Virus record (IMG/VR): IMGVR_UViG_3300036766_000194
Span: 62,001 to 126,000 of that record
DNA: 64,000 nt
Strand: one strand, 5' to 3'
The position numbers were made by a program, and so were the translations under genes. This document shows, one piece after another, positions 1 through 63,873 of this stretch. Below the pieces are notes generated by a model. That model searched no databases. It was not told where the DNA came from and was given only the letters and a program-made list of their open reading frames with translations. Position 1 is the first letter of the stretch, and the number at the start of each line of letters is the position of its first letter.

Positions 1-912
1 CGTAAGGAGGTAGGTGTAAATCCTCAAAACTGGTATAATTTTAAGAAAGAAAGGAAATTTGGACCAAGAATACCGCTTAGATATTTTCTAACCCATCGTC
101 GTAAATTACCAGCACCGCAAGGTTTATATTTTAGCCAAACTAGAGGCAAGGCTAGAGTGATTGGGAATCTGACTTTGCGGCTTAGTAATTGGGCCTATGT
201 TTTGGGATTCTTTTTAGGGGCTGGTTGGCTTAATAGGGATAGCCGAGGTGTTATTACGAGTGTCAGCTTTTCTGTGGATGCACCTCATTACAAAAAATTG
301 TGCACTGCCTTGGGAGCCATTAAAGAAACACCCCTGCGTATCCGAGAACGCTTCAGCACAGTTGCAATGGTTGAGATTGAGTGCGATAACAAATTCTTCG
401 CAGAAATTTTGGCTTACGTTTTCAAGGGGGCAAAGAAATGTTGGGAAAAAGAACTTCCTACAGAATGGACAACTACTTGGTCCAGGAAAGCTCGTGAACA
501 GCTATTGGAAGGACTTAGAGATTCAGACGGCGTAGCAGCTGGTTCTAATCCAACTACTAGTAGTGCCTATACAACCACTTCTCTGGCTTTAGCAAAATCA
601 ATTCTTCTCTTGCTGAGGAGTCTAGGTATATCGGGGAGTTACAGTGAACACTCTCCGAGTCTTGGGGGGTGGGTTAAGGAAAAGGACGGTTCATTACGTC
701 AGATACAAGGTAAAAGAATTTCCTACATAATTGGGTGGAGTGTTGGAACGGGTCATTGGGGTTCGGCTTTGCCCTATAAATCCCCCGAATTGTGGAATCA
801 AGCCCCAATACATAGGATTAAGGATGTCGTTCCGCCATCACATGTATACGATTTAGAAATGGAAGGTCATCCTTCTTTTTGCCTTGAAGGAATTGGTATG
901 CTAGGAAAAAAT
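1..912 (+). mobile_element. Intein with LAGLIDADG endonuclease (C-terminal part)
   Basis: LLEGLRDSDG LAGLIDADG-type motif; block F VYDLEM; ends GKN followed by +1 Ser of SATP. Confidence 0.8.
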
Positions 913-1917
913 TCCGCGACTCCAATTTACAACTATGGAGGAGAGATGTTTAACGTTCTAGATGTTCTCTATCCAGGTTGCCTAGGAACTTGGGATGAAT
1001 TTAGCCGCGAGTGGGTTGCTTATGCTTTTGGGGATAAACCCAAGATAAAGGATCCTAAAGCGTTTGGTGTTTATACTCGTGAAGCTGGACTCATGCTACG
1101 TCGGACCCGTATAGAGGTACGCCGCGAATTGCCTGAGGTTACGGTCGTCCCACACAGCATTGATTGTGACACGGCCATCCTTGACAAGATGAAGGGCAAG
1201 GCTATTGAGCTTGCCAAACTGATCCTTGCGCAGAAGCAAGATTTTCGTGGGCAAAAGATGCAAGCTGCTGGAGAATTTGATTTGCGTATGCGTCAAGCTA
1301 CAGGTATTGCCAAGGCTCCCTATGTTTGCGAATTTGTAAAATTCTTGATACAAGAGAGTAACGAACCTATTGTATTGTTCGGATGGCACAGGGAAGTTTA
1401 CGAGATCTATCTAGAAAAATTGAAAGAGTTTAATCCTGTGATGTATACAGGGAGTGAGACAGCTGTACAAAAGGAAGAGTCTAAGCAGAAATTTATCAAA
1501 GGTCAGAGTAAGGTTATGATAATCAGCCTCCGCTCTGGGGCGGGGCTGGATGGTTTACAGGATATTTGTCACATCGCGGTATTCGGAGAGTTAGACTGGT
1601 CAAATTCTGTTCATACTCAGTGTGTGGGTCGTATTCATAGAGATGGTCAGGATGAACCTGTCATCGCCTATTATTTGCTGAGTACTGATGGCTGTGATCC
1701 TATTATGTGCGATGTCTTAGGGATCAAACGGCAGCAATCTGAAGGCATATTAAATCCGTTAGGTGAGTTCGTAGGAGAAAACATAATACGGGAGCAGTAT
1801 ATAAGGGACCTAGCCGCCGATTTTTTGACGAAACAGGGAGTTGACGTTGAGAAGATTGAAAAACCCAAAGAAATCTCTGAAACACAAGTTTCCTCAGATA
1901 GCCCAGGAATGGCATGA
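1..1917 (+). CDS. SNF2-family helicase, 5'-truncated by the window edge, with an intein
   Basis: Frame open from nt 1. After the intein come SATP (motif III), IVLFGWH, SLRSGAGLDGLQ and QCVGRIHRDGQ (helicase C-terminal motifs). Confidence 0.9.
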   Translation, partial: RKEVGVNPQNWYNFKKERKFGPRIPLRYFLTHRRKLPAPQGLYFSQTRGKARVIGNLTLRLSNWAYVLGFFLGAGWLNRDSRGVITSVSFSVDAPHYKKLCTALGAIKETPLRIRERFSTVAMVEIECDNKFFAEILAYVFKGAKKCWEKELPTEWTTTWSRKAREQLLEGLRDSDGVAAGSNPTTSSAYTTTSLALAKSILLLLRSLGISGSYSEHSPSLGGWVKEKDGSLRQIQGKRISYIIGWSVGTGHWGSALPYKSPELWNQAPIHRIKDVVPPSHVYDLEMEGHPSFCLEGIGMLGKNSATPIYNYGGEMFNVLDVLYPGCLGTWDEFSREWVAYAFGDKPKIKDPKAFGVYTREAGLMLRRTRIEVRRELPEVTVVPHSIDCDTAILDKMKGKAIELAKLILAQKQDFRGQKMQAAGEFDLRMRQATGIAKAPYVCEFVKFLIQESNEPIVLFGWHREVYEIYLEKLKEFNPVMYTGSETAVQKEESKQKFIKGQSKVMIISLRSGAGLDGLQDICHIAVFGELDWSNSVHTQCVGRIHRDGQDEPVIAYYLLSTDGCDPIMCDVLGIKRQQSEGILNPLGEFVGENIIREQYIRDLAADFLTKQGVDVEKIEKPKEISETQVSSDSPGMA

Positions 1918-32488: not shown

Positions 32489-33334
32489 AAAACTCTCACC
32501 CTCATGATTGGCGAAAGCGGTTCTGGAAAATCTACCATTGCCAAGACCATGCTTGATCGTTATACTCTTCGCGTCAATCGGGATAGTATTCGCAAGATGC
32601 TCTTTGAGACTTGGAACGCCCGGTACGAAAAGATTGTTGAAAAGCTCGAATTTGAGGCGGCAGGGCAGGCGTTAGACGCTGGATTCAATGTCATTGTGGA
32701 TGACCTGAATATCAATTCCAGGACTCGTCAACAGTGGGAAGAGTTTGCCAAGAAAAAGGGAGCAGAGTTCTGTAAATATGAAGTGAATGTCTCCCTTGAC
32801 GAGTGCGTTCGTCGTGATAGCCACCGTGAGGGTAGGGACCGTGTGGGTCGGTCTGTAATCACCAAGCAATTCATCCGTAACGAACGTCCTGAAGTGTTTA
32901 AAAACACCCCTACAGTTTTGGTGGATGTTGACGGTACTCTGGCAGATTGTGAAGGCGTGCGTTCCCCCTATGACGAGTCCCGCGTGGGCGAGGACAAGGT
33001 CCATTGGAACATCGCGAGGATGGTTTGCGAGGAGTCTCGTGAGAATCAAATTATCATCGTTTCTGGCCGTCACGAAGACTGTGGTCCGGACACTGAGGAC
33101 TGGTTGCTCCATAAGGCCAGAGTTCCTTTCCAGGGATTGCTCATGCGTAACCGGGGCGACTTCCTCTCCAGCGACGTCATCGTTAAGGAAAAACTCCTCG
33201 CCATGATATTGAAGTATGTGGACAAGGCGAACATCCGGTTGGTCATTGATGACAGACCCCGCGTAATTCGATTTTGGAGAAGTGTTGGTTTGACCGTTTT
33301 TGCGGCTAGGGGTGAGGATCTTGAAGATTTTTAA
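32486..33334 (+). CDS. pseT: Polynucleotide 5'-kinase/3'-phosphatase (T4 PseT-like)
   Basis: GESGSGKST, VNRDSIR, DVDGTLA (HAD), VSGR and IDDRP. Confidence 0.92.
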   Translation: MKTLTLMIGESGSGKSTIAKTMLDRYTLRVNRDSIRKMLFETWNARYEKIVEKLEFEAAGQALDAGFNVIVDDLNINSRTRQQWEEFAKKKGAEFCKYEVNVSLDECVRRDSHREGRDRVGRSVITKQFIRNERPEVFKNTPTVLVDVDGTLADCEGVRSPYDESRVGEDKVHWNIARMVCEESRENQIIIVSGRHEDCGPDTEDWLLHKARVPFQGLLMRNRGDFLSSDVIVKEKLLAMILKYVDKANIRLVIDDRPRVIRFWRSVGLTVFAARGEDLEDF

Positions 33335-33338
33335 TCAC

Positions 33339-35660
33339 GTGGTCAATGATTTCACAACGACTTATTTGCGCGACATTCTCGATATTGAAAAGCTCGAAGA
33401 ACACGTTACCAATGGTGTCATTCGTTGCCAGGATCACCCGCTCTACCCCCGTCTGACGATATTGAACTACACTGAGAAAGCTCAGTTTGATCGTATTTGG
33501 GACAGCGTAACATCTGTCTGCCGGGGCTTGATTGTTGAGACTTCCCTACAGGTTGGCCCAGTACCGAGTAATCCGTTTGACGGAGCACGGGTCATCGCCC
33601 GTGCCTTCAACAAATTCCACAACCTGAACACAGAATATGTTCCAGAGACGATGGAAGAAAATCTTATCGGTATTCCGGAAGTAACCGATAAGCTGGATGG
33701 GTGTTTTCTAGGAAATACACTTCTCAATCTGTGGGATGGCGGAACAATCACAATTCGTGAGGTAGTTAAAAATCGTCTAAAAGTCAAACTCGTGGGTGCG
33801 GATGTTGCAGGAAGACTTGTCCCCACAGAAATTGTGGACTGGTTTGACAATGGAATTAAGGACCAGTGGCTTCTTTTGACAGTGGATTGTTTACCTTCTT
33901 TGAAATCAGGCTGTAGGACGGGAAACCATATTCCTGTAACACCCAATCACAGAATTCTTTTGAATGGAAGGTACCAACCCGCAGCTTACGCAAAAGTTGG
34001 AGATCTAGTTTCAACTCAGGAACTCCGACCTGATAACGCTGTGTTGGAACTTATAAGGGCAGGCCTCCTGGGAGATGGGTCGTTGTCTAAAAACGGAACA
34101 CATTCTTACTCTTATGGGGAAAATCATAAACAAGAGCACCTAGAGTATGTAAAGGAAATCCGTCTCTGGTTGGGTGAATGTGCCATTCAGGGAAAATCCA
34201 AGGTCTCTGGGCATGGCACCATAATGGAGCAAGCCAACTCTAAAGCCTACACATGGTTAGAAAGGATACGACAACTTTGGTACCCGAATGGAACAAAAGT
34301 TGTTCCTAAGGATTTATCTTGGATGAATAATTTTTGTGTGGCAAAGTGGTACATGGACGACGGTTCTCTTCAACACGATGAAAGACAGAAAGATCGTGCT
34401 CATTTTGCTACCAATGGTTTCAAAAAGAAGGACTGTGAAAGACTAGGTGTCAAGTTGCGTGAATTATATGGTGTAGACTACAGGTTGTCAGAAGATAATC
34501 GTGGAGGTTCAACCTGGTCAGTTAGACTTAACGCCGGAAAGAATGGGGAAATTGACAAGTTTTGGAAAGCAATTGCCGCTCATATAGTACCCTGTTTGCG
34601 ATACAAACTTCCTAAAGAATACAGAAATGTAAAGTATTCAGGTCATACTCCAGGTAAAGAAATACGAGAAAAGAGAGATGTTAAAATTCTTAGGATCTCC
34701 AAACTGACAGGAGACCAGAAAACTGCCACTCACAGCTATTTCCGTTCTGGTTGTAAGGGATTTGACATTAAAACCACTACAGGCAATTATATGGTAAGGG
34801 GTGTATTGGTTCATAATTCTCTAGGTATTGTCTTTCCCTATGACAACCAATGGCACGTAGCTACACGGGGGTCTTTTGACTCTGACCAGGCGCGATGGGC
34901 AACGGCATTCTTGCGCGAGCATTTGAATGTGACGGAACTCCTTCACCCGGATGAGCCGTTTCCGAAGGGCTATACCCCGGTCTGCGAAATTATCTACGCG
35001 GCCAACCGCATTGTCGTTTCCTACGACTTTGAAGGACTCGTGCTGCTTGCCTTTGTTGGTCCTAACGACGCTTATGAGATGCCTCGCGCTATGGCGGAAC
35101 GCGCTGCCGTGTTGGTCGGACTGCCGATCGTAAAGAAATTCAAGAAGACTTTATCCGAATGTGTCAAGGAAAACATTCCCAACACAGAAGGATATGTTCT
35201 TACCTATCCGAATGGGGTGAAAGTAAAGGTGAAGTTTGAGGAGTACGTTCGCCTTCACCGTATACTCACCGGGTTGTCTCCCATTGCTGTCTGGGAGATG
35301 ATGAAGAATAGTCAGGATTCTGAAATTGACCGTCTGCTTGAAGACCCCAAGATTCCCGAAGGATTTAAGACTTGGCTGAAGAAGTGGGACGCTAAGTTGT
35401 CGGAAGATTTCAGTAAGATTGAGGATACTACCTACAAGCTACACACTCTTGTGAAGGAAGCAGGCCTCATTCGGGAGAAATATTCCCGTGAAGAACGTAA
35501 AGCATTAGCCGAATTCATCATTAGGACAGTAGAAGATATAACATACCAGAAGGGGCTTCAGTTTGCTCTCGCCGACGGTAAGTCTATCATCCAGGAAATC
35601 TGGGAGTACATTCGTCCTAACGGTAAGGCTATTGACACTTTCAAAAAGGAAGGCGAATGA
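33339..35660 (+). CDS. rnlA: RNA ligase 1 (T4 Rnl1-like) with an intein
   Basis: LNYT..AQ, CRGLI, RAFNKFHN, KLDG|SLGI, ATRGSF.SDQA, EGYV and VKVKFEEY. Confidence 0.9.
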   Translation: MVNDFTTTYLRDILDIEKLEEHVTNGVIRCQDHPLYPRLTILNYTEKAQFDRIWDSVTSVCRGLIVETSLQVGPVPSNPFDGARVIARAFNKFHNLNTEYVPETMEENLIGIPEVTDKLDGCFLGNTLLNLWDGGTITIREVVKNRLKVKLVGADVAGRLVPTEIVDWFDNGIKDQWLLLTVDCLPSLKSGCRTGNHIPVTPNHRILLNGRYQPAAYAKVGDLVSTQELRPDNAVLELIRAGLLGDGSLSKNGTHSYSYGENHKQEHLEYVKEIRLWLGECAIQGKSKVSGHGTIMEQANSKAYTWLERIRQLWYPNGTKVVPKDLSWMNNFCVAKWYMDDGSLQHDERQKDRAHFATNGFKKKDCERLGVKLRELYGVDYRLSEDNRGGSTWSVRLNAGKNGEIDKFWKAIAAHIVPCLRYKLPKEYRNVKYSGHTPGKEIREKRDVKILRISKLTGDQKTATHSYFRSGCKGFDIKTTTGNYMVRGVLVHNSLGIVFPYDNQWHVATRGSFDSDQARWATAFLREHLNVTELLHPDEPFPKGYTPVCEIIYAANRIVVSYDFEGLVLLAFVGPNDAYEMPRAMAERAAVLVGLPIVKKFKKTLSECVKENIPNTEGYVLTYPNGVKVKVKFEEYVRLHRILTGLSPIAVWEMMKNSQDSEIDRLLEDPKIPEGFKTWLKKWDAKLSEDFSKIEDTTYKLHTLVKEAGLIREKYSREERKALAEFIIRTVEDITYQKGLQFALADGKSIIQEIWEYIRPNGKAIDTFKKEGE
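33702..34817 (+). mobile_element. Class 1 intein (372 aa) with LAGLIDADG endonuclease, inserted in ligase motif I
   Basis: KLDG|CFLGNT ... GLLGDGSL ... WYMDDGS ... VLVHN|S. Confidence 0.92.
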
Positions 35661-36609: not shown

Positions 36610-36849
36610 GTGCCAGGGATTAATGACGATTCTCTTGAAATCCAGGAAATTCATTGTCACAACTGTAATAGATATGTTCAATTTCCTATTGACTTATCCT
36701 TGAATGGTCGTCATGTTCTCAACTGTCCTAACTGTGGGCACGAATATTGTCGCATTGTCAATAGAGGGGTGATATCCGAAGAACGTTGGGACACTCGCGA
36801 CAATGCACTTCCACGTACTAAATATAGGACGCGGTGGGACCTTTTATAG
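36610..36849 (+). CDS. Zinc-ribbon protein
   Basis: HCHNC ... CPNCGHE.CR. Confidence 0.6.
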   Translation: MPGINDDSLEIQEIHCHNCNRYVQFPIDLSLNGRHVLNCPNCGHEYCRIVNRGVISEERWDTRDNALPRTKYRTRWDLL

Positions 36850-36929
36850 TTTTGCTCCCTTTATGATAAAACGAAGCCGAACTATGTCAGTTTTATTGAC
36901 GCGTCCTAGCTTTTTCTATACTTATAAAG

Positions 36930-38453: not shown

Positions 38454-41400
38454 GTGACCGACACACTACCTACTTGTCCCCTTATAACCTCCTACACTAG
38501 AGAGTTCGGACTCCCGGACGCTACTCTAGAGAAACTGTATGCGGTTCGTCAGTGGGATGTAGAACAACTCCTTCCTTTTAAATGGCCCGCTCAACTAAAG
38601 ACCCATACTCCTGAGGGGCCGTTACACTTACGAGAATATCAAAAGCAAGCCGCTCATCATTTGATAAGGATGCCTAGATTCATATTGGGAGATGCTGTAG
38701 GATTAGGAAAAGCACAACCTCTCACCGCTAAAATTCTTACTCCTACGGGATGGACTACCATGGGAGAAATTAAAGTGGGTGACGCCGTAGTCGATCCCGA
38801 CGGCGGAATCGGTTATGTAGAGGGGGTGTATCCTCAAGGAGAGAAGGAAATCTTTAGATTAAGAACCAATGACAGTTGTCAAACAGAGTGTTGTGAGGAA
38901 CATCTTTGGACTGTTCAAACAGTTGATGATAGAATAAAAGGAAAATTTCGTACTCTGACCACGAAACAGCTTTTAGAAAAAGGTCTGTTTGAAATTAACG
39001 GTCCGGAAGGTTGGCACCGTAATAGATTCTTTTTACCCTCAATAAAACCTAGCTCCTTTCAAGCAAGAAGTTCTCTTTCTATTAAATCCTACACGATGGG
39101 TGCTCTTTTAGGTGACGGTACTTTTCGACATCATATGGCTTTTTCGGTTGCTGAAAGAGAAATACTAGAACGTGTTGAGAAAGAACTTCCTTCAACATTG
39201 AATTTGAAGCATGTAGGAGATCACGATTACAATATCATCACCCCTACTAGAAAAAACAACGCATATATTAATGCTATGAGGAAATTGGGTTTGTTTGGAC
39301 ACTTTTCTTATGAGAAATTTATCCCAGAGTGCTACTTGAAATCTTCGATTTCTAACAGAATAGAACTTCTTAGAGGAATAATGGATACCGATGGTGAATG
39401 TGGGAAAAGCTATGGGGCTTATTTTTCTTCTACCTCATTTCACCTTGCTAACGATGTAGCAGATTTGGTCCGTTCCCTTGGAGGAATAGCTAAAATTAAG
39501 TATGGAGGGAAAGGAAAGTACAAAAAGAAAGATGGCACAATTAAAATCTGTCGAGGTAGTTGGAATGTCAGCATCAAGACGTCGTTTGTTCCTTTTCACT
39601 TAACTAGGAAGGTACAAATTTGGAAACCTCCGATATTTGCTAGGGCAATTCTAGATATTTCTTCTGTGGGTGTCAAGTCTGCTCAGTGTATTCGTGTTTC
39701 AACCAAACGAAACCTATACATTACAGATGATTATATACCCACGCATAATACTCTAGACTGTATCGCTGCTGCCGCATATCTTAAAGGACGTTTTCCTAAC
39801 ATCAAAATCATTGTATTAGCAACAAAGTCCACTACGTTGCAGTGGGCTAGTGAGTTTGAACGTTTCTCTACATTACGACCTTATGTTATGCAGGACACAT
39901 TTGGTAAAAAGTCTTCTTACCCCGCACGATTTGATCAGCTTCATACATTCTTCCACTCAAAAAAGATAGATGTAATGATTTGTAAATACTCTTCTATGAT
40001 TGGTAAGAGGAAGAAAATAGAAGGTCGATTTGATTCTGAAGGTAATCCAGTAAAACAGGGTCGAGAACGTATTGCTAGTGAAGTGAGAGAATTCTGTAAG
40101 ATCATTAAACCTTACAAAGAAAACGTCATTCTTATACTTGACGAGTGTCAGAAGTTCAAAGCTCAACCGTTGACTTCAAAAGTGCTAACTCCTGAAGGTT
40201 GGAAATTTATGGGAGAACTACAATTAGGAGATAAGGTAGTCGATCCTGATGGTGGATGGGGTAAAGTCAGTGAACTTCACCCAATACACGAAGCCGAAGT
40301 TTTTCAGTTGACCACCGATGACGGATGTAAAGCACAAGCTGCAGATAAACACCTTTGGTTGGTGACAGACGAGAATAACAGACAGAGGAATACAGATCGT
40401 ATCCTCACCACTCAAAACTTAATCACTGAGATAGTTCGTCGTAAGATTTTAAAAAGACCTCTATCTATCCCGGTAACAAAACCTGTAAACTTTACACCTA
40501 AGCGAAAAAGACTCCCCATTTCTCCCTATGTTTTGGGTGTTCTATTGGGAGATGGAAGCATTGCCTACGATGGTGTGGGCTTTACGAATGAAGATTTAGA
40601 GATAGTGGAACATTGTAAGACCCTTCTTCCAGCCTCTTTGAAGATTATTCAAGATAACTATGATCTCATTTTTTGGCGGGTAGTTCAGAAAAAAGTACAT
40701 TTTGGAAAAACATTAGTGCGTTGGGCAGGAAGAAAAGATGGGAGTAAAAAACCTTCCTGGAGAACTCACGAATACGCTTATTGGTTGCGCCGTTTTGGGT
40801 TAAGAGGTAAAAGAGCGCATGAAAAGTACATCCCTCTAGATTATTTGCGAGCAAGTATCCCCCAACGCATCGAATTATTGCGAGGATTACTTGATACAGA
40901 CGGGAGTATTTCTGACACGGGACAGATTATTCTCAACACCACATCTAAGGCTCTAGCTGAAAATACACTAGAATTAGTGCGCTCACTTGGTGGGGTGGCA
41001 AGAATCCACGGACCTTACGAGGGAAGTTACACTAAAAATGAAAGAAAAATAACAACTCGAAATTTCTGGAGAATAAGTCTCTTCACTCCTATAAACCCGT
41101 TCCGTTTATCTAGAAAAGCAGAAAAATGGGAGAAGCAGAGAAAGTTAAAACGTAGCAGTCAAATGTCAGCTCGAGCTAAGAGAATAGTAACCATCGATAC
41201 CTTGGGAAGAAATTTAGTACGGTGCATCACTGTGACCACAAAACGAGGATTGTATATTACAGATGACTATCTAGTTACACACAACAGTGTCGGGGGGAGT
41301 CATCGTTATCTAGTACAGGCATTACAAAAACAATGTGGATGGGTCTGGGCATTAACCGCTACGGTGATCAAGAATGATCTTAGCGAATTTTATAGTATTG

Positions 41401-42563
41401 CCTCCGCCATAGGCATTCGTCCTTTCGGTTACATGAGAGATTTTGAGGAAGAATTCTGTATATTTTATGACCAGTACATTGGTGGTGGTAGAAGCATCAA
41501 AACTCTAAAAGGATACCAGAACGTTGCCAAGTTTAAGGCGGGTATAAGACCCTTCTTTTATGGAAGGTCTCAGGCTCAAGTTAAAGAACCCTTACCTAAA
41601 CTCACCACCATTTACCACCGAGTGGACTTAAATGACGAACAAGCTAAATTACTTCTAACAGATATTCCCCAAGGAAAGTTTGTCCTTCCTCCCACGTTTG
41701 TTGAACATAATGGGGAGATGTATCTGCGTGAACGAGACGTCAACAATAATATGACGATGTTGTCCGTATATCAACTTGTTGCTAATCATCCGGGTCTATT
41801 AGACAGATCAAACATAAAAGATTTTTACAGTAAAAAGCTGTCTCCCAAAGAAGAGTGTCTGTTAGATATGTTAGATGGAGACTACCGGGGAGAGAAGATT
41901 ATTGTCTATACAAAGTATCGTTCTTGGATTGATCGTCTAGAAAAGATCACCAAGGATGGACATTTCACCGACCGTAAATTCCTACGCATAACCGGGAATG
42001 AAAATGAACAGGAACGGCACGAAGCTAAACTTAAATTTCAAGATCCTAATTCCGGGTACGATCTAATTGTTATCAATGCCGCAGGTATGGAAGGAATTAA
42101 TCTACAACAAGCCGCCCATATGATTTTATTGGATGCTCCGTGGTCTTGGGGAGACCTTATACAGTTGGTAGGAAGAATGATCCGCATGGCTTCTCCTCAC
42201 TCGGCTTGTACTCTTCACGTTCTTACCGCAAAGGGTACTATTGACGAGTACACCATTGAAACTCTAAAGGGTAAGAAAGGTGTTTTTGAATCAATCCTAG
42301 GAGAGTCTCATTCTGCGGGTATCTTAGATGATGGATTGGGGTATGACATAGCTAGCGGTATGGAAGCGGTGGGGACCGAAGAAGAATTCAAATCCATGTT
42401 AACGGCGCATATAAAATCGGTAGGCATGTCGGATTTCCTAGAAGGAGAACTTCTTATTCAGGCGCGGGAAGACGACCAATACAAGATGGTATTTGAAAAG
42501 GGTGGACGAAAGAGAAAGGAGAAAGTCAGTGACAAAGATCTTCTCGACAGATGGGGCATATAG
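38454..42563 (+). CDS. SNF2-family helicase with two inteins
   Basis: LREYQ, GDAVGLGK|T (Walker A), ILDECQKFK|S, LTAT.IKN.L.EFY, NAAGMEGINLQ and QLVGR..R. Confidence 0.92.
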   Translation: MTDTLPTCPLITSYTREFGLPDATLEKLYAVRQWDVEQLLPFKWPAQLKTHTPEGPLHLREYQKQAAHHLIRMPRFILGDAVGLGKAQPLTAKILTPTGWTTMGEIKVGDAVVDPDGGIGYVEGVYPQGEKEIFRLRTNDSCQTECCEEHLWTVQTVDDRIKGKFRTLTTKQLLEKGLFEINGPEGWHRNRFFLPSIKPSSFQARSSLSIKSYTMGALLGDGTFRHHMAFSVAEREILERVEKELPSTLNLKHVGDHDYNIITPTRKNNAYINAMRKLGLFGHFSYEKFIPECYLKSSISNRIELLRGIMDTDGECGKSYGAYFSSTSFHLANDVADLVRSLGGIAKIKYGGKGKYKKKDGTIKICRGSWNVSIKTSFVPFHLTRKVQIWKPPIFARAILDISSVGVKSAQCIRVSTKRNLYITDDYIPTHNTLDCIAAAAYLKGRFPNIKIIVLATKSTTLQWASEFERFSTLRPYVMQDTFGKKSSYPARFDQLHTFFHSKKIDVMICKYSSMIGKRKKIEGRFDSEGNPVKQGRERIASEVREFCKIIKPYKENVILILDECQKFKAQPLTSKVLTPEGWKFMGELQLGDKVVDPDGGWGKVSELHPIHEAEVFQLTTDDGCKAQAADKHLWLVTDENNRQRNTDRILTTQNLITEIVRRKILKRPLSIPVTKPVNFTPKRKRLPISPYVLGVLLGDGSIAYDGVGFTNEDLEIVEHCKTLLPASLKIIQDNYDLIFWRVVQKKVHFGKTLVRWAGRKDGSKKPSWRTHEYAYWLRRFGLRGKRAHEKYIPLDYLRASIPQRIELLRGLLDTDGSISDTGQIILNTTSKALAENTLELVRSLGGVARIHGPYEGSYTKNERKITTRNFWRISLFTPINPFRLSRKAEKWEKQRKLKRSSQMSARAKRIVTIDTLGRNLVRCITVTTKRGLYITDDYLVTHNSVGGSHRYLVQALQKQCGWVWALTATVIKNDLSEFYSIASAIGIRPFGYMRDFEEEFCIFYDQYIGGGRSIKTLKGYQNVAKFKAGIRPFFYGRSQAQVKEPLPKLTTIYHRVDLNDEQAKLLLTDIPQGKFVLPPTFVEHNGEMYLRERDVNNNMTMLSVYQLVANHPGLLDRSNIKDFYSKKLSPKEECLLDMLDGDYRGEKIIVYTKYRSWIDRLEKITKDGHFTDRKFLRITGNENEQERHEAKLKFQDPNSGYDLIVINAAGMEGINLQQAAHMILLDAPWSWGDLIQLVGRMIRMASPHSACTLHVLTAKGTIDEYTIETLKGKKGVFESILGESHSAGILDDGLGYDIASGMEAVGTEEEFKSMLTAHIKSVGMSDFLEGELLIQAREDDQYKMVFEKGGRKRKEKVSDKDLLDRWGI
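38712..39749 (+). mobile_element. Ala1 class 3 intein (346 aa) in Walker A, with LAGLIDADG endonuclease
   Basis: GK|AQPLTAK ... EEHLW ... LLRGIMDTDG ... AQCIRV ... YITDDYIPTHN|T. Confidence 0.9.
40161..41285 (+). mobile_element. Ala1 class 3 intein (375 aa) just after Walker B, with LAGLIDADG endonuclease
   Basis: FK|AQPLTSK ... DKHLW ... LLRGLLDTDG ... VRCITV ... YITDDYLVTHN|S. Confidence 0.9.
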
Positions 42564-53319: not shown

Positions 53320-53331
53320 AATAGCTACATG
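53317..53331 (+). promoter_or_regulatory. Leaderless promoter TAGAAT-N6-ATG
   Basis: TAGAAT AGCTAC ATG; the TAG doubles as the upstream stop codon. Confidence 0.6.
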
Positions 53332-54567
53332 GAAAACCTAGTAGCCAACATGGTTGTGAGGGTTCTGTCCCTTAACGGGTACGAAGCCTACTTGGTGGGT
53401 GGGTGTGTTCGTGACAAGATAATGGGTCATAAACCCAAGGATTACGACGTTACCACCAATGCCACACCCGCTCAGGTTATGGAACTTTTCTCCGAAACGA
53501 TCCCCGTAGGAGCTAGTTTTGGTGTAGTTCGTGTTCGAATTGATGGCGTTGAGATTGAAGTTGCTACTTACCGTGCCGATGGTGACTACAGTGATGGTCG
53601 TCGTCCGGACACTGTAGAATTTTCCAAGACCGTTAATGAAGACGTTGTTCGTCGTGACTTCACCCTCAATGGTCTTCTGCAAGATTCCAAGGGAGATGTA
53701 ATTGACCTTGTCGGGGGTCTGCAAGACATTCATAACAAGTATATCAGTGCTATTGGAGATCCTATTAAGAGATTTGAAGAGGATTCTTTGCGTATGCTTC
53801 GCGCTATTAGATTTGCAGCGCGTTTCGATTTTAAAATTGAATTCAATACCTTAGCAGCCCTTATCTCTAAGGCATCTACTATCAAGCGTGTTAGCCAGGA
53901 ACGCATCACTAACGAACTTCTTCAAATGCTTAGTGGTCCTCGTCCCAGTATTGCGATAAAACTCCTGGAGGAAACCACCCTGTTGGCTGAAATCTTTCCC
54001 AAGTATCATTCAATGGATATCGTTTTGAATAAATTTAGGGGTACGCGAACGAAGAATCCTATGGTGGCTCTAGTTCTGTTCTTGAGTGAACTGTCAGAGA
54101 AGGAATTTGTCAACGTTCTTAACCAACTGAAATTGAGTAACGAACAGAAGCAGGTTGCTACTCTGGCCTACTCTTACAAACATAAGATGCGGGAATTTAT
54201 CACCGCTGACTTGGCTACCCTCAAGCGTTTCAAGCGTTTGGTGGGGGCTAAAGAAGCTATGACCGTCTTCATTATTGAGTCTTCTTATGGAGTTGACCAG
54301 TTTCCTCAGGCTGGAGAGATTATTTTCCGACTGGATAACTGTGAAACTTCCTATAAGCCGCTCATCACAGGGAACGACCTGATTGCTGCGGGTTACAAAC
54401 CTGGTCCGTTGTTCTCTACGGTATTAAATGTCGTAGAGACCGCGCAGCTTAATGAAGACATCACCACCCAAGAGCAGGCTCTGAGTCTAGCTAAGATGGC
54501 TATGAGTATGGGGTCTGAAAACGTGGAGGTGTTTGTTATGTCGCGCCCCGGCGGGCGCGTGGATTGA
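53329..54567 (+). CDS. cca: CCA-adding tRNA nucleotidyltransferase / poly(A) polymerase family
   Basis: YLVGGCVRD...KDYDVTT, EVATYR, DVVRRDFTLN, EDSLRMLRAIRF and VSQERI..E. Confidence 0.9.
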   Translation: MENLVANMVVRVLSLNGYEAYLVGGCVRDKIMGHKPKDYDVTTNATPAQVMELFSETIPVGASFGVVRVRIDGVEIEVATYRADGDYSDGRRPDTVEFSKTVNEDVVRRDFTLNGLLQDSKGDVIDLVGGLQDIHNKYISAIGDPIKRFEEDSLRMLRAIRFAARFDFKIEFNTLAALISKASTIKRVSQERITNELLQMLSGPRPSIAIKLLEETTLLAEIFPKYHSMDIVLNKFRGTRTKNPMVALVLFLSELSEKEFVNVLNQLKLSNEQKQVATLAYSYKHKMREFITADLATLKRFKRLVGAKEAMTVFIIESSYGVDQFPQAGEIIFRLDNCETSYKPLITGNDLIAAGYKPGPLFSTVLNVVETAQLNEDITTQEQALSLAKMAMSMGSENVEVFVMSRPGGRVD

Positions 54568-54570
54568 AAA
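54540..54570 (+). CRISPR. Solitary, slightly degenerate type I-C CRISPR repeat
   Basis: GTCGCGCCCCGGCGGGCGCGTGGATTGAAAA; CGCGCCC/GGGCGCG stem retained; contains the cca stop codon. Confidence 0.8.
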
Positions 54571-54793
54571 GAGTCACTCAGTGACCGCAGCAACACCACC
54601 GTGGTATGTGGAGCAGCAGGCAGTGGAAAGACAACATATGTCAACACACACAAGCAGCCAGATGATCTCGTGTGGGACGTCTAGCCCCTCGTGTGGGGTG
54701 TACACAGCCACACCACCCCGTGTGGGTGCCCGGCGCGTGTGGTTTTTTACCATATGTTCACTATTTGACTTTTCAACCGCTATTCCATAGTAG

Positions 54794-54825
54794 GTCGCGC
54801 CCCGTGCGGGCGCGTGGATTGAAAC
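54794..54825 (+). CRISPR. Solitary canonical 32-nt type I-C CRISPR repeat
   Basis: GTCGCGCCCCGTGCGGGCGCGTGGATTGAAAC, preceded by a TTGACT-containing leader-like segment; no third repeat and no cas genes in the window. Confidence 0.88.
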
Positions 54826-54964
54826 CCTACTGGATGCCTTCGAATAGCCAATAAGAAGGGACAGCTATAAGTTGCTCTAAAACCACATTTGTGGAACACT
54901 GTAACTGCACATCCAGTAAAACTTTCGTAAATAGATTATATGTACTTCTTTATGAGGGACGTCT

Positions 54965-56035
54965 ATGCCGCAAGATCAGAGAAGTACTTTCGATCAACTA
55001 TTATCTCTTTTGGAATTAGCCAATAAGAATGGTTTGTATGATGCCGCCGACTGGCTTCAACGAGAATTAGACTCTTGGTATAAAGACTGGAATAAGGTTC
55101 GTATACGCGCTTCTAAACGCGCCACCGATGAAGCAGCCCCTCCTCCTAACACAGTAGAACGTCATCAATTAATTGACTGGCTACAAAATGGGATTTCTGA
55201 CTATGTAGACTTTACTTTGGGTTCCCTTCCTGGTCATAGCCCAGCATTGGAACTTTGGGAAGCATGGGACGGAGGAGATAATTCATTTCATATCACCTTC
55301 CGTAGCGCAGAAGTCAAAAAGTCAGCGTCTTTTAACAAGACCAAAATCTTTGAATTTATTAATAATTTCTTAAAGAATAAGAGATTAGTAGACACAAAAG
55401 ATGTACTTCTTGATGAACTTATGAAGCAATTCGGTATGCCTCCTGAATTAGCTAGAGTGGCAGTGGAACAATTTTGGTCAAAGTTCTGGGAAAGTTTGGG
55501 TTTCCAACGTCGTCGTTCTGGAATGGAAGACAAAATAGCCGCAGTTAACGGACATTACATTTGGGAAGCTAACGGGGACGAAGCCATCATAGTATCTCCC
55601 GATCATCAAGTTAAACATCTATCATTTGAGGAGGCTCAGCCTTTCTGGGCTAAACTCTTTGAATTAGAAGAACAGATATCAGATACCGATCAGTTACAAC
55701 TTGCTATTGACGACTACTGCGCAACTTATTTTACCAATGAACCTTCTGTAGAACCTGTCGTAGGGTCATTTAAAGCCGCTCTTTTAAAGAGAGGGTCTGA
55801 CTTACATAATCGGGTAGAAAAAGCAAGTACAGAACTCGCTGAACTTTGGAAGAAGGTCACTCCTGCTCAAGCTAAAGGTTATGCTATTGAGCATCATCTT
55901 CATCTTGTTAAACAAAATCTCAAACAGGGATTAGAACTGATTCCTTCTCAGCCCGAAGTTGCTTCGGTTCATATAACAATGGCAGAAGAAGCCATCCGTA
56001 AAGCCTCCGAAGAAATATCTCATTTAAAACTGTAG
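54965..56035 (+). CDS. Modular hypothetical protein (small polyvalent-type)
   Basis: GAGGG RBS; ~55-85-aa modules separated by SKRAT, KKSAS, DKIAA and LKRGS. Confidence 0.75.
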   Translation: MPQDQRSTFDQLLSLLELANKNGLYDAADWLQRELDSWYKDWNKVRIRASKRATDEAAPPPNTVERHQLIDWLQNGISDYVDFTLGSLPGHSPALELWEAWDGGDNSFHITFRSAEVKKSASFNKTKIFEFINNFLKNKRLVDTKDVLLDELMKQFGMPPELARVAVEQFWSKFWESLGFQRRRSGMEDKIAAVNGHYIWEANGDEAIIVSPDHQVKHLSFEEAQPFWAKLFELEEQISDTDQLQLAIDDYCATYFTNEPSVEPVVGSFKAALLKRGSDLHNRVEKASTELAELWKKVTPAQAKGYAIEHHLHLVKQNLKQGLELIPSQPEVASVHITMAEEAIRKASEEISHLKL

Positions 56036-56071: not shown

Positions 56072-56147
56072 GGTCCCTTAGCTCAATGGTTAGAGCGCCC
56101 GGCTCATAATCGGTAGGTTCTAGGTTCAAGTCCTAGAGGGACCACCA
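56072..56147 (+). tRNA. tRNA-Ile2(CAU) (Met cannot be fully excluded)
   Basis: 76-nt cloverleaf GGTCCCT/AGGGACC, anticodon CAT, encoded CCA; resembles bacterial lysidine-type Ile2. Confidence 0.88.
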
Positions 56148-63597: not shown

Positions 63598-63686
63598 GGA
63601 GCGGACGCCCTGTTGGAATGGGCACCTGTCTGTAAAACAGGAGTCCCCTGCGGATATTGTGGGTTCGAATCCCTCTCGCTCCACCA
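63598..63686 (+). tRNA. tRNA-Tyr(GUA)
   Basis: CCTGT-CTGTAAA-ACAGG anticodon arm, long variable arm, TTCGAAT, encoded CCA. Confidence 0.85.
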
Positions 63687-63698
63687 AGTTTTATCTTT

Positions 63699-63784
63699 GC
63701 GCGAGTGGTGGAATGGCAGACACGCTGTCCTCAGAAGGCAGTCCTCGAAAGAGGGTGGAGGTTCAAATCCTCTCTTGCGCACCA
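63699..63784 (+). tRNA. tRNA-Leu(CAG)
   Basis: CTGTC-CTCAGAA-GGCAG arm, long variable arm, encoded CCA. Confidence 0.9.
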
Positions 63785-63786
63785 AT

Positions 63787-63873
63787 GCCGAAGTGGCGGA
63801 ACTAGGCAGACGCGGCTGGCTCAAACCCAGTTGGTTAACAGCCATGGGGGTTCAAATCCCTCCTTCGGTACCA
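63787..63873 (+). tRNA. tRNA-Leu(CAA)
   Basis: GCTGG-CTCAAAC-CCAGT arm, long variable arm, encoded CCA. Confidence 0.88.

What the first reader, a model, noticed from the sequence alone, without database searches (positions are those of the whole stretch)
54540..54825. Two solitary type I-C CRISPR repeats with no cas genes: candidate RNA anti-CRISPRs (Racr) or mini-array
Seen: a canonical 32-nt I-C repeat at 54794 and a 31-nt variant at 54540, both keeping the 7-bp CGCGCCC/GGGCGCG stem. They are 223 nt apart (too long for a spacer), and neither is followed by another repeat after 33-37 nt. Repeat 2 has a TTGACT promoter/leader-like element directly upstream. Repeat 1 would be transcribed from the cca gene, whose stop codon lies inside it. 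Known: phage solitary repeat units can act as RNA anti-CRISPRs by titrating Cas5/Cas7, including for type I-C. Inference: the phage decoys or reprograms a host I-C Cascade, using two independently expressed repeat units.
Basis: partly seen in the sequence, partly recalled or inferred. Interest (0 to 1): 0.85.

Follow-up and report, generated by a model that had tools for sequence, protein, structure and literature searches.

The report
Phage CRISPR repeats bracketing captured phage DNA
A 300-kb phage with no cas genes of its own carries two genuine type I-C CRISPR repeats, and the 223 bases between them are a cut-down piece of a different, temperate phage, so the pair looks like one odd mini-array aimed at hijacking the host's CRISPR machinery, not two unrelated decoy repeats.

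Summary
R1 (54540-54570, 31 nt) and R2 (54794-54825, 32 nt) are the only I-C repeats in the window and in the whole 299,875-bp contig. The exact R2 sequence forms arrays beside a complete I-C cas operon in bacteria. No Cas protein was found in the window, and no I-C Cas7 was found anywhere on the contig.

The 223-nt interval is not anonymous. 54571-54678 is an in-frame internal fragment (83% amino-acid identity) of the HNH-ATPase packaging gene of a GC-rich temperate HK97-like phage family. 54722-54774 matches that family's conserved element just downstream of the gene. Homology starts at the first base after R1 and runs to within 4-20 nt of R2. The TTGACT "leader" lies in the captured block.

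The 35 nt after R2 partly match the adjacent gene, and the match ends at position 35, as for spacers of virus-borne mini-arrays.

Best reading (0.4): one cas-less, array-like unit whose RNA is cut by host Cas5c and loaded on host I-C Cascade, as guide and/or decoy. Rivals are pure Racr decoys and a young, functionless recombination scar. Host, expression and activity are untested. The kind is known; the over-long captured "spacer" is new.

The parts
53329..54567 (+). cca gene (tRNA nucleotidyltransferase, 412 aa). Its last 9 codons and its stop are supplied by R1.
   Evidence: Pfam PolyA_pol, PolyA_pol_RNAbd and tRNA_NucTran2_2. Relatives end their cca differently and have no repeat there.
54540..54570 (+). 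R1: I-C CRISPR repeat, 31 nt in this window (32 nt in variant L057). Stem-loop plus an 11-nt handle whose last base is A.
   Evidence: E 4e-8; fold; full-length variant in an independent metagenome.
54571..54684 (+). Captured fragment A. It holds codons about 133-168 (linker plus Walker A) of the HNH-AAA_33 packaging gene of a temperate HK97-like phage family. These are joined by an internal deletion to the last codon and the TAG stop.
   Evidence: tblastx matches 54571-54678 with 83% identity over 36 codons to L134 (E 5e-16), and this is the only match of that family in the whole window.
54685..54793 (+). Captured fragment B: the counterpart of the family's conserved element between the HNH-ATPase gene and terS. 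It has GC hairpins, an invariant CCCG-CGC core, a T-run and a CTATTT-A-TTTT box, and is probably a terminator and/or cos region.
   Evidence: A profile of 5 family intergenic regions gives its best hit in the whole window, on both strands, at 54722-54774 (E 0.0034, envelope 54702-54790). With 3 members the hit had E 0.042. Pairwise tests alone are weak.
54794..54825 (+). R2: canonical 32-nt I-C repeat.
   Evidence: (E 7e-11). It is identical in L138 and identical to array repeats beside an I-C operon.
54826..54860 (+). S2: a 35-nt spacer-like sequence. Its last 23 nt resemble a site in the adjacent gene. Its first 12 nt, which would be the seed, do not.
   Evidence: 54838-54860 matches the gene site (about 55009-55031) at 21 of 23 positions with one gap. 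Of 1000 dinucleotide shuffles, none reached that score (also family D9). The match ends exactly 35 nt after R2. No exact target was found in IMG/VR.
54826..54920 (+). Structured RNA tail after R2. A long-range stem joins 54829-36 to 54911-18 and encloses two hairpins.
   Evidence: The fold of 54794-54930 gives -42.8 kcal/mol and z = -2.9. None of 200 shuffles folded as well.
54965..56035 (+). Adjacent gene (356 aa, no known family). It carries the imperfect protospacer-like site at about 55009-55031.
   Evidence: No Pfam or PHROG match. Orthologues in related phages keep the LANK-G-LYDA motif at this site.

Best explanation
R1 and R2 are the two borders of one cas-less, array-like unit carried by a lytic jumbo phage.

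Anatomy (shown). The order is R1, then a 223-nt 'giant spacer', then R2, then a 35-nt spacer-like sequence, then a structured tail. The giant spacer is an internally deleted copy of a roughly 500-nt segment of a temperate, cos-type HK97-like phage, running from the middle of its HNH-ATPase packaging gene into the region upstream of terS. The 35-nt sequence is related to the phage's own adjacent gene but diverges in the seed. That is the pattern reported for virus-borne mini-array spacers that hit sibling viruses and spare self.

Origin (inferred). The foreign block entered between two repeat copies in one of two ways. Either the host adaptation machinery integrated an over-long fragment, duplicating the repeat, or recombination between earlier normal spacers and their protospacers in a co-infecting temperate phage extended the spacer.

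Mechanism (inferred). The unit is transcribed with the + strand cca operon. In a host with an I-C system, Cas5c would cut each repeat at the base of its stem, leaving 11-nt handles that start at 54560 and 54815. Cas7 and Cas8c would then assemble on the RNA. Two effects would follow. Host Cascade is loaded with phage-chosen guides against competitor phages. Cas5c and Cas7 are drawn away from host crRNAs; the 223-nt RNA between the two repeats could bind many Cas7 copies, which is the Racr-like decoy effect.
For: Repeats:
- They are genuine and are the only copies on the contig.
- The I-C assignment was tested on a bacterial locus.
- No Cas family was found among 40 window ORFs, and the contig is absent from the 51 IMG/VR contigs hit by an I-C Cas7 profile.

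Interval:
- It has 55-61% GC against about 42% in the flanks.
- 54571-54678 is 83% identical in amino acids but only about 70% in nucleotides to family members. It has no frameshift, and it is the only family match in the window. This fits a recent capture from an unsampled family member.
- Homology starts at the first base after R1.
- The family's intergenic profile puts its best window hit at 54722-54774, collinear and on the same strand.
- The family is temperate and HK97-like, with integrase, DnaB, capsid, TerL and portal.
- Distant cultured relatives carry the gene 130-220 nt from the end of cos-type genome records.

Setting and S2:
- Related jumbo phages have no repeat here and carry other small genes between cca and the 356-aa gene, so this is a variable slot.
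- S2 partly matches the adjacent gene, and the match ends at position 35.
- Phage mini-arrays are reported to target adjacent genes of close relatives, with the carrier's own locus mutated, and to lack leaders (PMC6858448).
- An I-C solitary repeat (RacrIC1) inhibits I-C interference experimentally (PMC10651486).
- The locus is identical in an independent metagenome apart from a one-base loop indel.
Against: - No repeat lies at 33-37 nt after either repeat. A 223-nt spacer is far outside anything known to give a working I-C Cascade.
- No terminal repeat follows S2.
- The trinucleotide before the junction-equivalent site in sampled family members is TTG, CTG, ATG or AAG, not the I-C PAM TTC.
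- No near-identical target was found for the insert or for S2.
- S2 lies inside a strong RNA structure, which would hinder guiding.
- Orthologues of the adjacent gene do not explain the first 12 nt of S2.
- The host is unknown, and none of about 1500 I-C spacers matches this phage or the temperate family.
- Expression, processing and any effect on interference are untested.
- The locus is young, so its conservation says nothing about selection.
Confidence: 0.4

Rival explanations
1. Pure RNA anti-CRISPR decoys (Racr). Each repeat acts only as a Cas5c/Cas7 sponge, and the DNA between and after them is irrelevant hitch-hiking sequence.
For: The repeats have perfect hairpins and handles and no cas genes accompany them. 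Both point along the direction of transcription. Many other IMG/VR viral contigs carry solitary I-C repeats. RacrIC1 has been validated, and Racrs work by competing for Cas proteins (PMC10651486).
Against: This does not explain why a foreign phage segment sits flush between the two repeats, nor why the S2 match to the adjacent gene ends at spacer length. R1 overlaps a coding region. No + strand promoter is called. No acr gene is recognised nearby. The SRU definition requires that no other repeat be associated.
Confidence: 0.25
2. A functionless, recent recombination scar. A piece of an array, or repeats plus temperate-phage DNA, landed in a hypervariable slot and is now decaying.
For: The slot between cca and the next gene varies among relatives. 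The insert already has an internal deletion, and R1 has a loop indel that is polymorphic between populations. Contigs of another metagenome stop at 54678, exactly at the deletion junction, and resume at 54758, which hints at heterogeneity. There is no PAM and no perfect target.
Against: Both repeats keep every stem pair and the handle, and R2 is identical to the consensus. The same architecture appears in an independent metagenome, and an ENA assembly shows the same gene spacing. Repeat-bearing RNA in an I-C host would meet Cas5c whether or not it is selected for.
Confidence: 0.27
3. A viral crRNA-like regulator (Cracr). Partial complementarity of the sequence after R1 or R2 directs host Cascade to repress its own cas promoter or a CRISPR-guarding toxin.
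For: Such viral RNAs exist, including I-C two-spacer arrays (bioRxiv 10.1101/2024.10.29.618823). The unit has two repeats, and S2 has no perfect target.
Against: No TTC-plus-seed match of 8-11 nt for S2, and none beyond 9 nt for the start of the insert, in 1.08 Mb of fetched loci that include 71 genome loci carrying this repeat; the few 8-9-nt matches were in viral contigs. No downstream pseudo-repeat is present. The sequence after R1 is plainly temperate-phage coding DNA.
Confidence: 0.04
4. An assembly artefact: a collapsed or chimeric host array stitched into a phage contig.
For: Repeats break short-read assemblies. Two Logan contigs end just after cca, and two JGI contigs break inside the interval.
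Against: Identical junctions (cca to R1 to insert, and insert to R2 to the next gene) occur in an independent metagenome, and an ENA assembly shows the same 398-nt gap. Both flanks are syntenic phage genes. The interval holds no array periodicity.
Confidence: 0.02

Closest known systems
Virus-borne mini-CRISPR arrays without cas genes (Medvedeva et al. [quoted passage not shown] 58, which I believe is Faure et al. 2019)
   Same: Host-type repeats sit in an intergenic slot of a virus with no cas genes. The sequence after a repeat derives from other viruses. One spacer-like segment resembles the adjacent gene, and the carrier's own copy is mismatched. There is no leader, as reported for phage mini-arrays.
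   Different: The inter-repeat distance is 223 nt (originally about 500 nt) against 33-37 nt for I-C. The insert is about 70% identical in nucleotides to sampled relatives, so it is not a spacer-grade match to any known target. There is no terminal repeat after S2. No target has been identified.
Racr RNA anti-CRISPRs / solitary repeat units, including RacrIC1 (Camara-Wilpert et al. 2023, PMC10651486)
   Same: A phage carries repeats identical to host-type I-C repeats, apart from cas genes. The expected result is competition for Cas5c and Cas7.
   Different: There are two repeats 254 nt apart that bracket captured phage DNA. R1 overlaps the end of a gene. No promoter was called and no acr neighbour was recognised. 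Expression and inhibition are untested.
Viral crRNA-like regulators (Cracr arrays; bioRxiv 10.1101/2024.10.29.618823)
   Same: A multi-repeat unit on a phage, with no cas genes and with spacers that have no perfect target.
   Different: No pseudo-repeat is paired at spacer distance. No seed match to cas promoter regions was found in the I-C loci examined.
CRISPR arrays on huge phages (Al-Shayeb et al. 2020, recalled from memory, not read here)
   Same: A jumbo phage from a metagenome carries CRISPR repeats, apparently directed at other phages and dependent on host Cas proteins.
   Different: There are only two repeats, no regular array, and an over-long insert.

Membership tests
Type I-C CRISPR repeat | A unit of about 32 nt with a 5' GTCGCGCC, a 6-7-bp GC stem with a 4-5-nt loop, and a 3' handle ending ATTGAAAC | tested here: met
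   R2 matches perfectly. R1 has a one-base-shorter loop and a final A. The L057 variant of R1 is full length.
Type I-C CRISPR repeat | The same repeat forms arrays beside a cas3-cas5c-cas8c-cas7-cas4-cas1-cas2 operon | tested here: met
   Exact R2 occurs in 71 genome stretches. L068 (Methylotuvimicrobium buryatense) has Cas3 C-terminus, Cas5d, Csd1, Cas7, Cas4, Cas1 and Cas2 directly upstream of the array.
Canonical CRISPR array | At least 3 repeats at a regular period of about 66 nt with unique spacers of 33-37 nt | tested here: not met
   There are two repeats 254 nt apart start to start, and no other repeat-like site in the window or on the contig.
Virus-borne mini-CRISPR array | Two or three repeats separated by spacers of canonical length | tested here: not met
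   The spacer is 223 nt. S2 has canonical length only by inference from where its match ends, and no repeat follows it.
Virus-borne mini-CRISPR array | Spacers derive from or target other viruses, often the adjacent gene of close relatives, with self spared | tested here: inconclusive
   The insert is homologous to a temperate phage family. S2 resembles the adjacent gene with seed divergence. No near-perfect target was found, and no TTC PAM is present in family members.
Virus-borne mini-CRISPR array | No cas genes on the virus | tested here: met
   No Cas family was found among 40 window ORFs. The contig is not among the 51 IMG/VR contigs hit by an I-C Cas7 profile. The other 236 kb were not read directly.
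Racr (RNA anti-CRISPR from a solitary repeat unit) | A repeat-like unit in an intergenic region, not associated with other full or partial repeats or with cas genes | tested here: inconclusive
   No cas genes were found. However, two repeats lie 254 nt apart and R1 overlaps the cca 3' end.
Racr (RNA anti-CRISPR from a solitary repeat unit) | A promoter within 250 bp upstream; expression as a small RNA | tested here: inconclusive
   The consensus scan finds no + strand promoter in 54300-55100. TTGACT at 54766 has a poor -10 element. Read-through from the + strand operon is likely. Expression cannot be tested here.
Racr (RNA anti-CRISPR from a solitary repeat unit) | Binds Cas proteins and inhibits interference of the matching subtype in the host | not testable with these tools
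   The host is unknown, because the exact repeat occurs in bacteria of many phyla. No spacer links to this phage were found.
Cracr / viral crRNA-like regulator | A pseudo-repeat, pseudo-spacer, pseudo-repeat unit with at least 9 PAM-proximal matches to a host cas promoter or toxin gene | tested here: not met
   No downstream pseudo-repeat is present. No TTC-plus-seed match for S2, and none beyond 9 nt for the start of the insert, in 1.08 Mb of fetched loci that include 71 genome loci carrying this repeat. The true host's locus is unknown.

The most novel reading that the evidence does not exclude
CRISPR repeats carried by phages can collect long stretches (hundreds of bases) of competitor-phage DNA. 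This would happen through host Cas1-Cas2 integrating over-long end fragments from near the cos site, or through spacer-protospacer recombination. The resulting giant crRNA-like transcript, with a handle at one end and a hairpin at the other, would act as a high-capacity Cas7 sink while still marking a rival phage. Repeat-flanked inserts in other viral contigs (L009, L028) hint that repeat pairs may serve more generally as cassette borders in phage genomes.
Probability: 0.12. Interest if true: 0.75.

Novelty: new variant of a known kind. Interest (0 to 1): 0.5.

Why it matters
Cas-less repeats on phages are currently sorted into decoys (Racr), regulators (Cracr) and mini-arrays. This locus sits between those classes. 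It has two perfect I-C repeats whose 'spacer' is a recognisable segment, hundreds of bases long, of another phage's packaging region.

If it is functional, it shows that a jumbo phage can both tax and redirect a host I-C system. It would also suggest a route, by long-fragment integration or by spacer-driven recombination, by which phage-borne repeats acquire content without the usual length ruler.

Even if it is inert, it is a dated, readable record of DNA exchange between a lytic jumbo phage, a temperate phage and a CRISPR array. The temperate family, once placed in a host as a prophage, could also reveal the jumbo phage's host.

Tried and rejected
Searches for relatives and targets:
- Near and distant DNA searches of GenBank phages found no relative of the locus. 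The only hits were 28-nt matches at 93% identity (E 0.1) of 54833-54860 to one family of E. coli siphophages, which I treated as chance.
- Host assignment by repeat identity failed, because the exact repeat occurs in bacteria of many phyla.
- Host assignment by spacers failed. About 1500 spacer candidates from the fetched arrays match neither the window nor the temperate family or related jumbo phages.
- An exact search for S2 in IMG/VR found only the contig itself.
- Orthologues of the adjacent gene do not carry a better S2 match.

Structures considered and dropped:
- A third, degenerate repeat inside the interval. The hairpin at 54714-54729 resembles the repeat stem but scores E 17. Homologous hairpins exist in the temperate family itself, so I rejected it.
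- A decayed regular array. It is ruled out by the contiguous 36-codon homology and the lack of a 66-nt period.
- A cca to P-loop read-through fusion. The frames agree only in this window, because of the one-base R1 deletion, and not in L057. I treated this as coincidence.
- Microhomology (GATTG) between the repeat end and the donor gene as the joint. The registers differ by 4 nt, so this is unsupported.
- A minus-strand 59-aa ORF (54753-54574) with a terminator-like hairpin. It has no homologues or support and lies across the captured gene fragment.
- A Cracr-type seed search, which was negative.

Weak statistics:
- Pairwise tests of the insert's 3' half against single family members gave p of 0.04-0.13. 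Only the family profile gave significance.
Full report
**Source and setting.** The window is bases 62001-126000 of IMGVR_UViG_3300036766_000194, a 299,875-bp viral contig. It encodes rIIA/rIIB, terminase large subunit, a T4-type RNA ligase, polynucleotide kinase, NAD ligase, a CCA-adding enzyme and several tRNAs. It has no close relative among GenBank phages. All genes from about 49.3 to 58.8 kb lie on the + strand.

**The observation.**
- R2 (54794-54825) is a perfect 32-nt I-C repeat.
- R1 (54540-54570) is the same unit with a one-base-shorter loop and a final A.
- A profile of 86 I-C repeat variants finds only these two sites in the window (E 7e-11 and 4e-8) and nothing repeat-like after either of them.
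- The pattern scan of IMG/VR finds only these two on the whole contig.
- Both fold into the 7-bp stem with a free 3' handle.
- The cca stop codon lies inside R1.
- The I-C label was tested. The exact R2 sequence occurs in 71 genome stretches, and in Methylotuvimicrobium buryatense the array directly follows cas3, cas5d, csd1, cas7, cas4, cas1 and cas2.
- The locus is not an assembly accident. Two contigs from another metagenome are identical to it, up to 54678 and from 54758 on. The only difference is that R1 there has the full 32-nt form. An ENA assembly shows the same 398-nt gap between cca and the next gene.
- In the full-length R1 variant, cca runs 18 nt further, so 'stop codon inside the repeat' is variant-specific.

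**No cas genes.** None of 40 window ORFs matches a Cas family. The only defence-library hits are generic helicase, homing-endonuclease and restriction-enzyme matches. A profile of 15 I-C Cas7 proteins finds 51 IMG/VR contigs, and this contig is not among them. The other 236 kb could not be read directly.

**What lies between the repeats.**
- The interval has 55-61% GC against about 42% around it.
- Read in frame, 54571-54684 gives 37 codons with a Walker A motif. A degenerate search for that motif led to a 10.7-kb viral contig, L053. A protein search then led to a family of about 50 HNH-AAA_33 fusion proteins, which match PHROG 4581 (annotated 'terminase small subunit') and HNH endonuclease PHROGs.
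- The window fragment corresponds to residues about 133-168 of these proteins, which is the linker between the HNH and ATPase domains plus the P-loop.
- tblastx of six family contigs against the whole window gives one site only. It is 54571-54678, with 83% identity over 36 codons to L134 (E 5e-16). Nucleotide identity there is about 70%. The divergence is therefore largely synonymous, so the copy is probably a recent acquisition from an unsampled member and not an old pseudogene.
- Homology begins at the first base after R1.
- After codon 168 the sequence jumps to one codon and a stop. About 85-90 codons are missing.
- The rest of the interval resembles the family's conserved region between this gene and terS (alignment A2). 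Pairwise statistics are weak. A profile of five family intergenic regions, searched over both strands of all 64 kb, puts its best hit at 54722-54774 (E 0.0034; envelope to 54790). This is collinear and on the same strand.
- R2 starts at 54794.
- The donor family is temperate and HK97-like, with integrase, DnaB, capsid, TerL and portal on L135. It carries no I-C repeats.
- In distant cultured relatives (Lactobacillus cos phages), the gene lies 130-220 nt from the end of the linear record. The captured segment therefore probably borders the cos end. This last step is inference.

**What lies after R2.**
- The next 35 nt (S2) end in a 23-nt stretch that matches the adjacent 356-aa gene at about 55009-55031, at 21 of 23 positions with one gap. 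None of 1000 shuffles reached that score.
- The match stops exactly 35 nt after R2, and the first 12 nt do not match.
- Medvedeva et al. report that spacers of virus-borne mini-arrays target regions close to the array in related viruses. The carrier's own locus is mutated, and phage mini-arrays lack leaders (PMC6858448).
- S2 fits that description, but no perfect target exists in IMG/VR or among the three known orthologues.
- R2 plus the following roughly 100 nt fold unusually well (z = -2.9).

**Evolutionary setting.** Related jumbo phages (cca 57% identical) have no repeat and carry three unrelated small genes between cca and the orthologue of the 356-aa gene. Another relative has an AAA gene there. 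The repeats therefore sit in a variable accessory slot.

**Interpretation.** The anatomy is R1, captured temperate-phage block, R2, 35-nt spacer-like sequence. This is best read as one array-like unit, not two unrelated solitary repeats.

How the long block got between two repeat copies is inferred. One route is integration of an over-long end fragment by host Cas1-Cas2 with repeat duplication. The other is recombination between earlier spacers and their protospacers in a co-infecting temperate phage.

How it works is also inferred. The unit would be transcribed with the cca operon, cut by host Cas5c, and loaded onto Cas7 and Cas8c. Two non-exclusive outcomes follow: guides against rival phages, and titration of Cas proteins as shown for RacrIC1 (PMC10651486). 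I give the combined array-like reading 0.4, pure decoy 0.25, inert scar 0.27, Cracr-type regulator 0.04 and assembly artefact 0.02.

The main arguments against a guide role are:
- the 223-nt length;
- the missing terminal repeat;
- the lack of a TTC PAM in sampled family members;
- the RNA structure over S2.

The main argument against a pure decoy is that it leaves the flush foreign insert and the spacer-length S2 match unexplained. The main argument for a scar is the deletion, together with the polymorphic R1 indel and the contig breaks at 54678 and 54758 in another metagenome.

**Comparison with known kinds.**
- The repeats pass both tested criteria for I-C repeats.
- The locus fails the defining spacing of a CRISPR array and of a mini-array.
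- It meets the 'no cas' criterion.
- It is inconclusive for the Racr definition, because there are two associated repeats, one is partly in a gene, and no promoter is called.
- It fails the Cracr tests that could be run.

It therefore works like, and is closest to, virus-borne cas-less repeat elements, but it is a new variant: an over-long, identifiable captured segment in place of a spacer.

**Limits.** The host is unknown, because the exact repeat is spread across bacteria of many phyla and no spacer links were found. Expression, processing and activity are untested. The exact donor and the S2 target are unsampled.

Noticed in passing
L009:358-989 and L005:6125-6156 (IMGVR_UViG_3300031673_000079); L028:1026-1636 (IMGVR_UViG_3300020195_000003): Other viral contigs also have I-C repeats bracketing inserts. 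In L009 two identical repeats flank a roughly 570-nt AT-rich ORF with its own RBS. The second repeat there and a third copy on the same contig share 22 nt of upstream flank. L028 has a mini-array made of a full repeat, a 34-nt spacer and a 21-nt truncated repeat. Two small ORFs and a further solitary repeat identical to R2 follow it.
   Followed up: partly
Loci L013, L015, L020, L024, L030, L049, L050 and others: Many solitary I-C repeats in IMG/VR contigs lie 10-35 nt upstream of an RBS and start codon on the same strand, so they sit in the 5' UTR of a gene. L017, L025 and L040 have a repeat, then 30 nt, then a GGGGCC-ACAT-GGCCCC hairpin. L026 has the same arrangement without the 30 nt.
   Followed up: no
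window 54678 / 54758 (L057 end, L138 start): In metagenome 3300032173 the phage's contigs stop exactly at the internal deletion junction of the captured gene fragment and resume 80 nt later. Two Logan contigs also end just after cca. This may reflect population heterogeneity in the insert, or an assembly problem at GC hairpins.
   Followed up: partly
window 36828-36905 (+): Rfam CyVA-1 RNA motif at 54 bits against a gathering score of 41. From memory, the motif is associated with cyanobacteria and their viruses. It is the only hint at host affiliation.
   Followed up: no
window 157-1917, 33300-35660, 38454-42563: LAGLIDADG homing-endonuclease domains lie inside a helicase, a T4-type RNA ligase and a SNF2 helicase ORF. 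These are probably inteins.
   Followed up: no
window 33300-35660, 53329-54567, 56072-56147, 63598-63873: A tRNA-repair and tRNA-supply set. It comprises RNA ligase, polynucleotide kinase (PHROG 505, ORF not pinned down), the CCA-adding enzyme, tRNA-Met, and a Tyr/Leu/Leu tRNA cluster. The repeat locus is embedded in this module.
   Followed up: no
L053:4470-4625(-), L134:4269-4445, L135:8840-8965, L136:2278-2445, L137:2030-2180: The temperate phage family has a conserved non-coding element between its HNH-ATPase gene and terS. It consists of GC hairpins, an invariant CCCG-CGC core, a T-run and a CTATTTCA-TTTT box. It may be the cos site or a terminator plus late promoter.
   Followed up: partly
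window 54574-54753 (-): A 59-aa Cys-rich minus-strand ORF is followed by a terminator-like hairpin at 54586-54572. It runs antisense to the captured gene fragment and is probably spurious.
   Followed up: no
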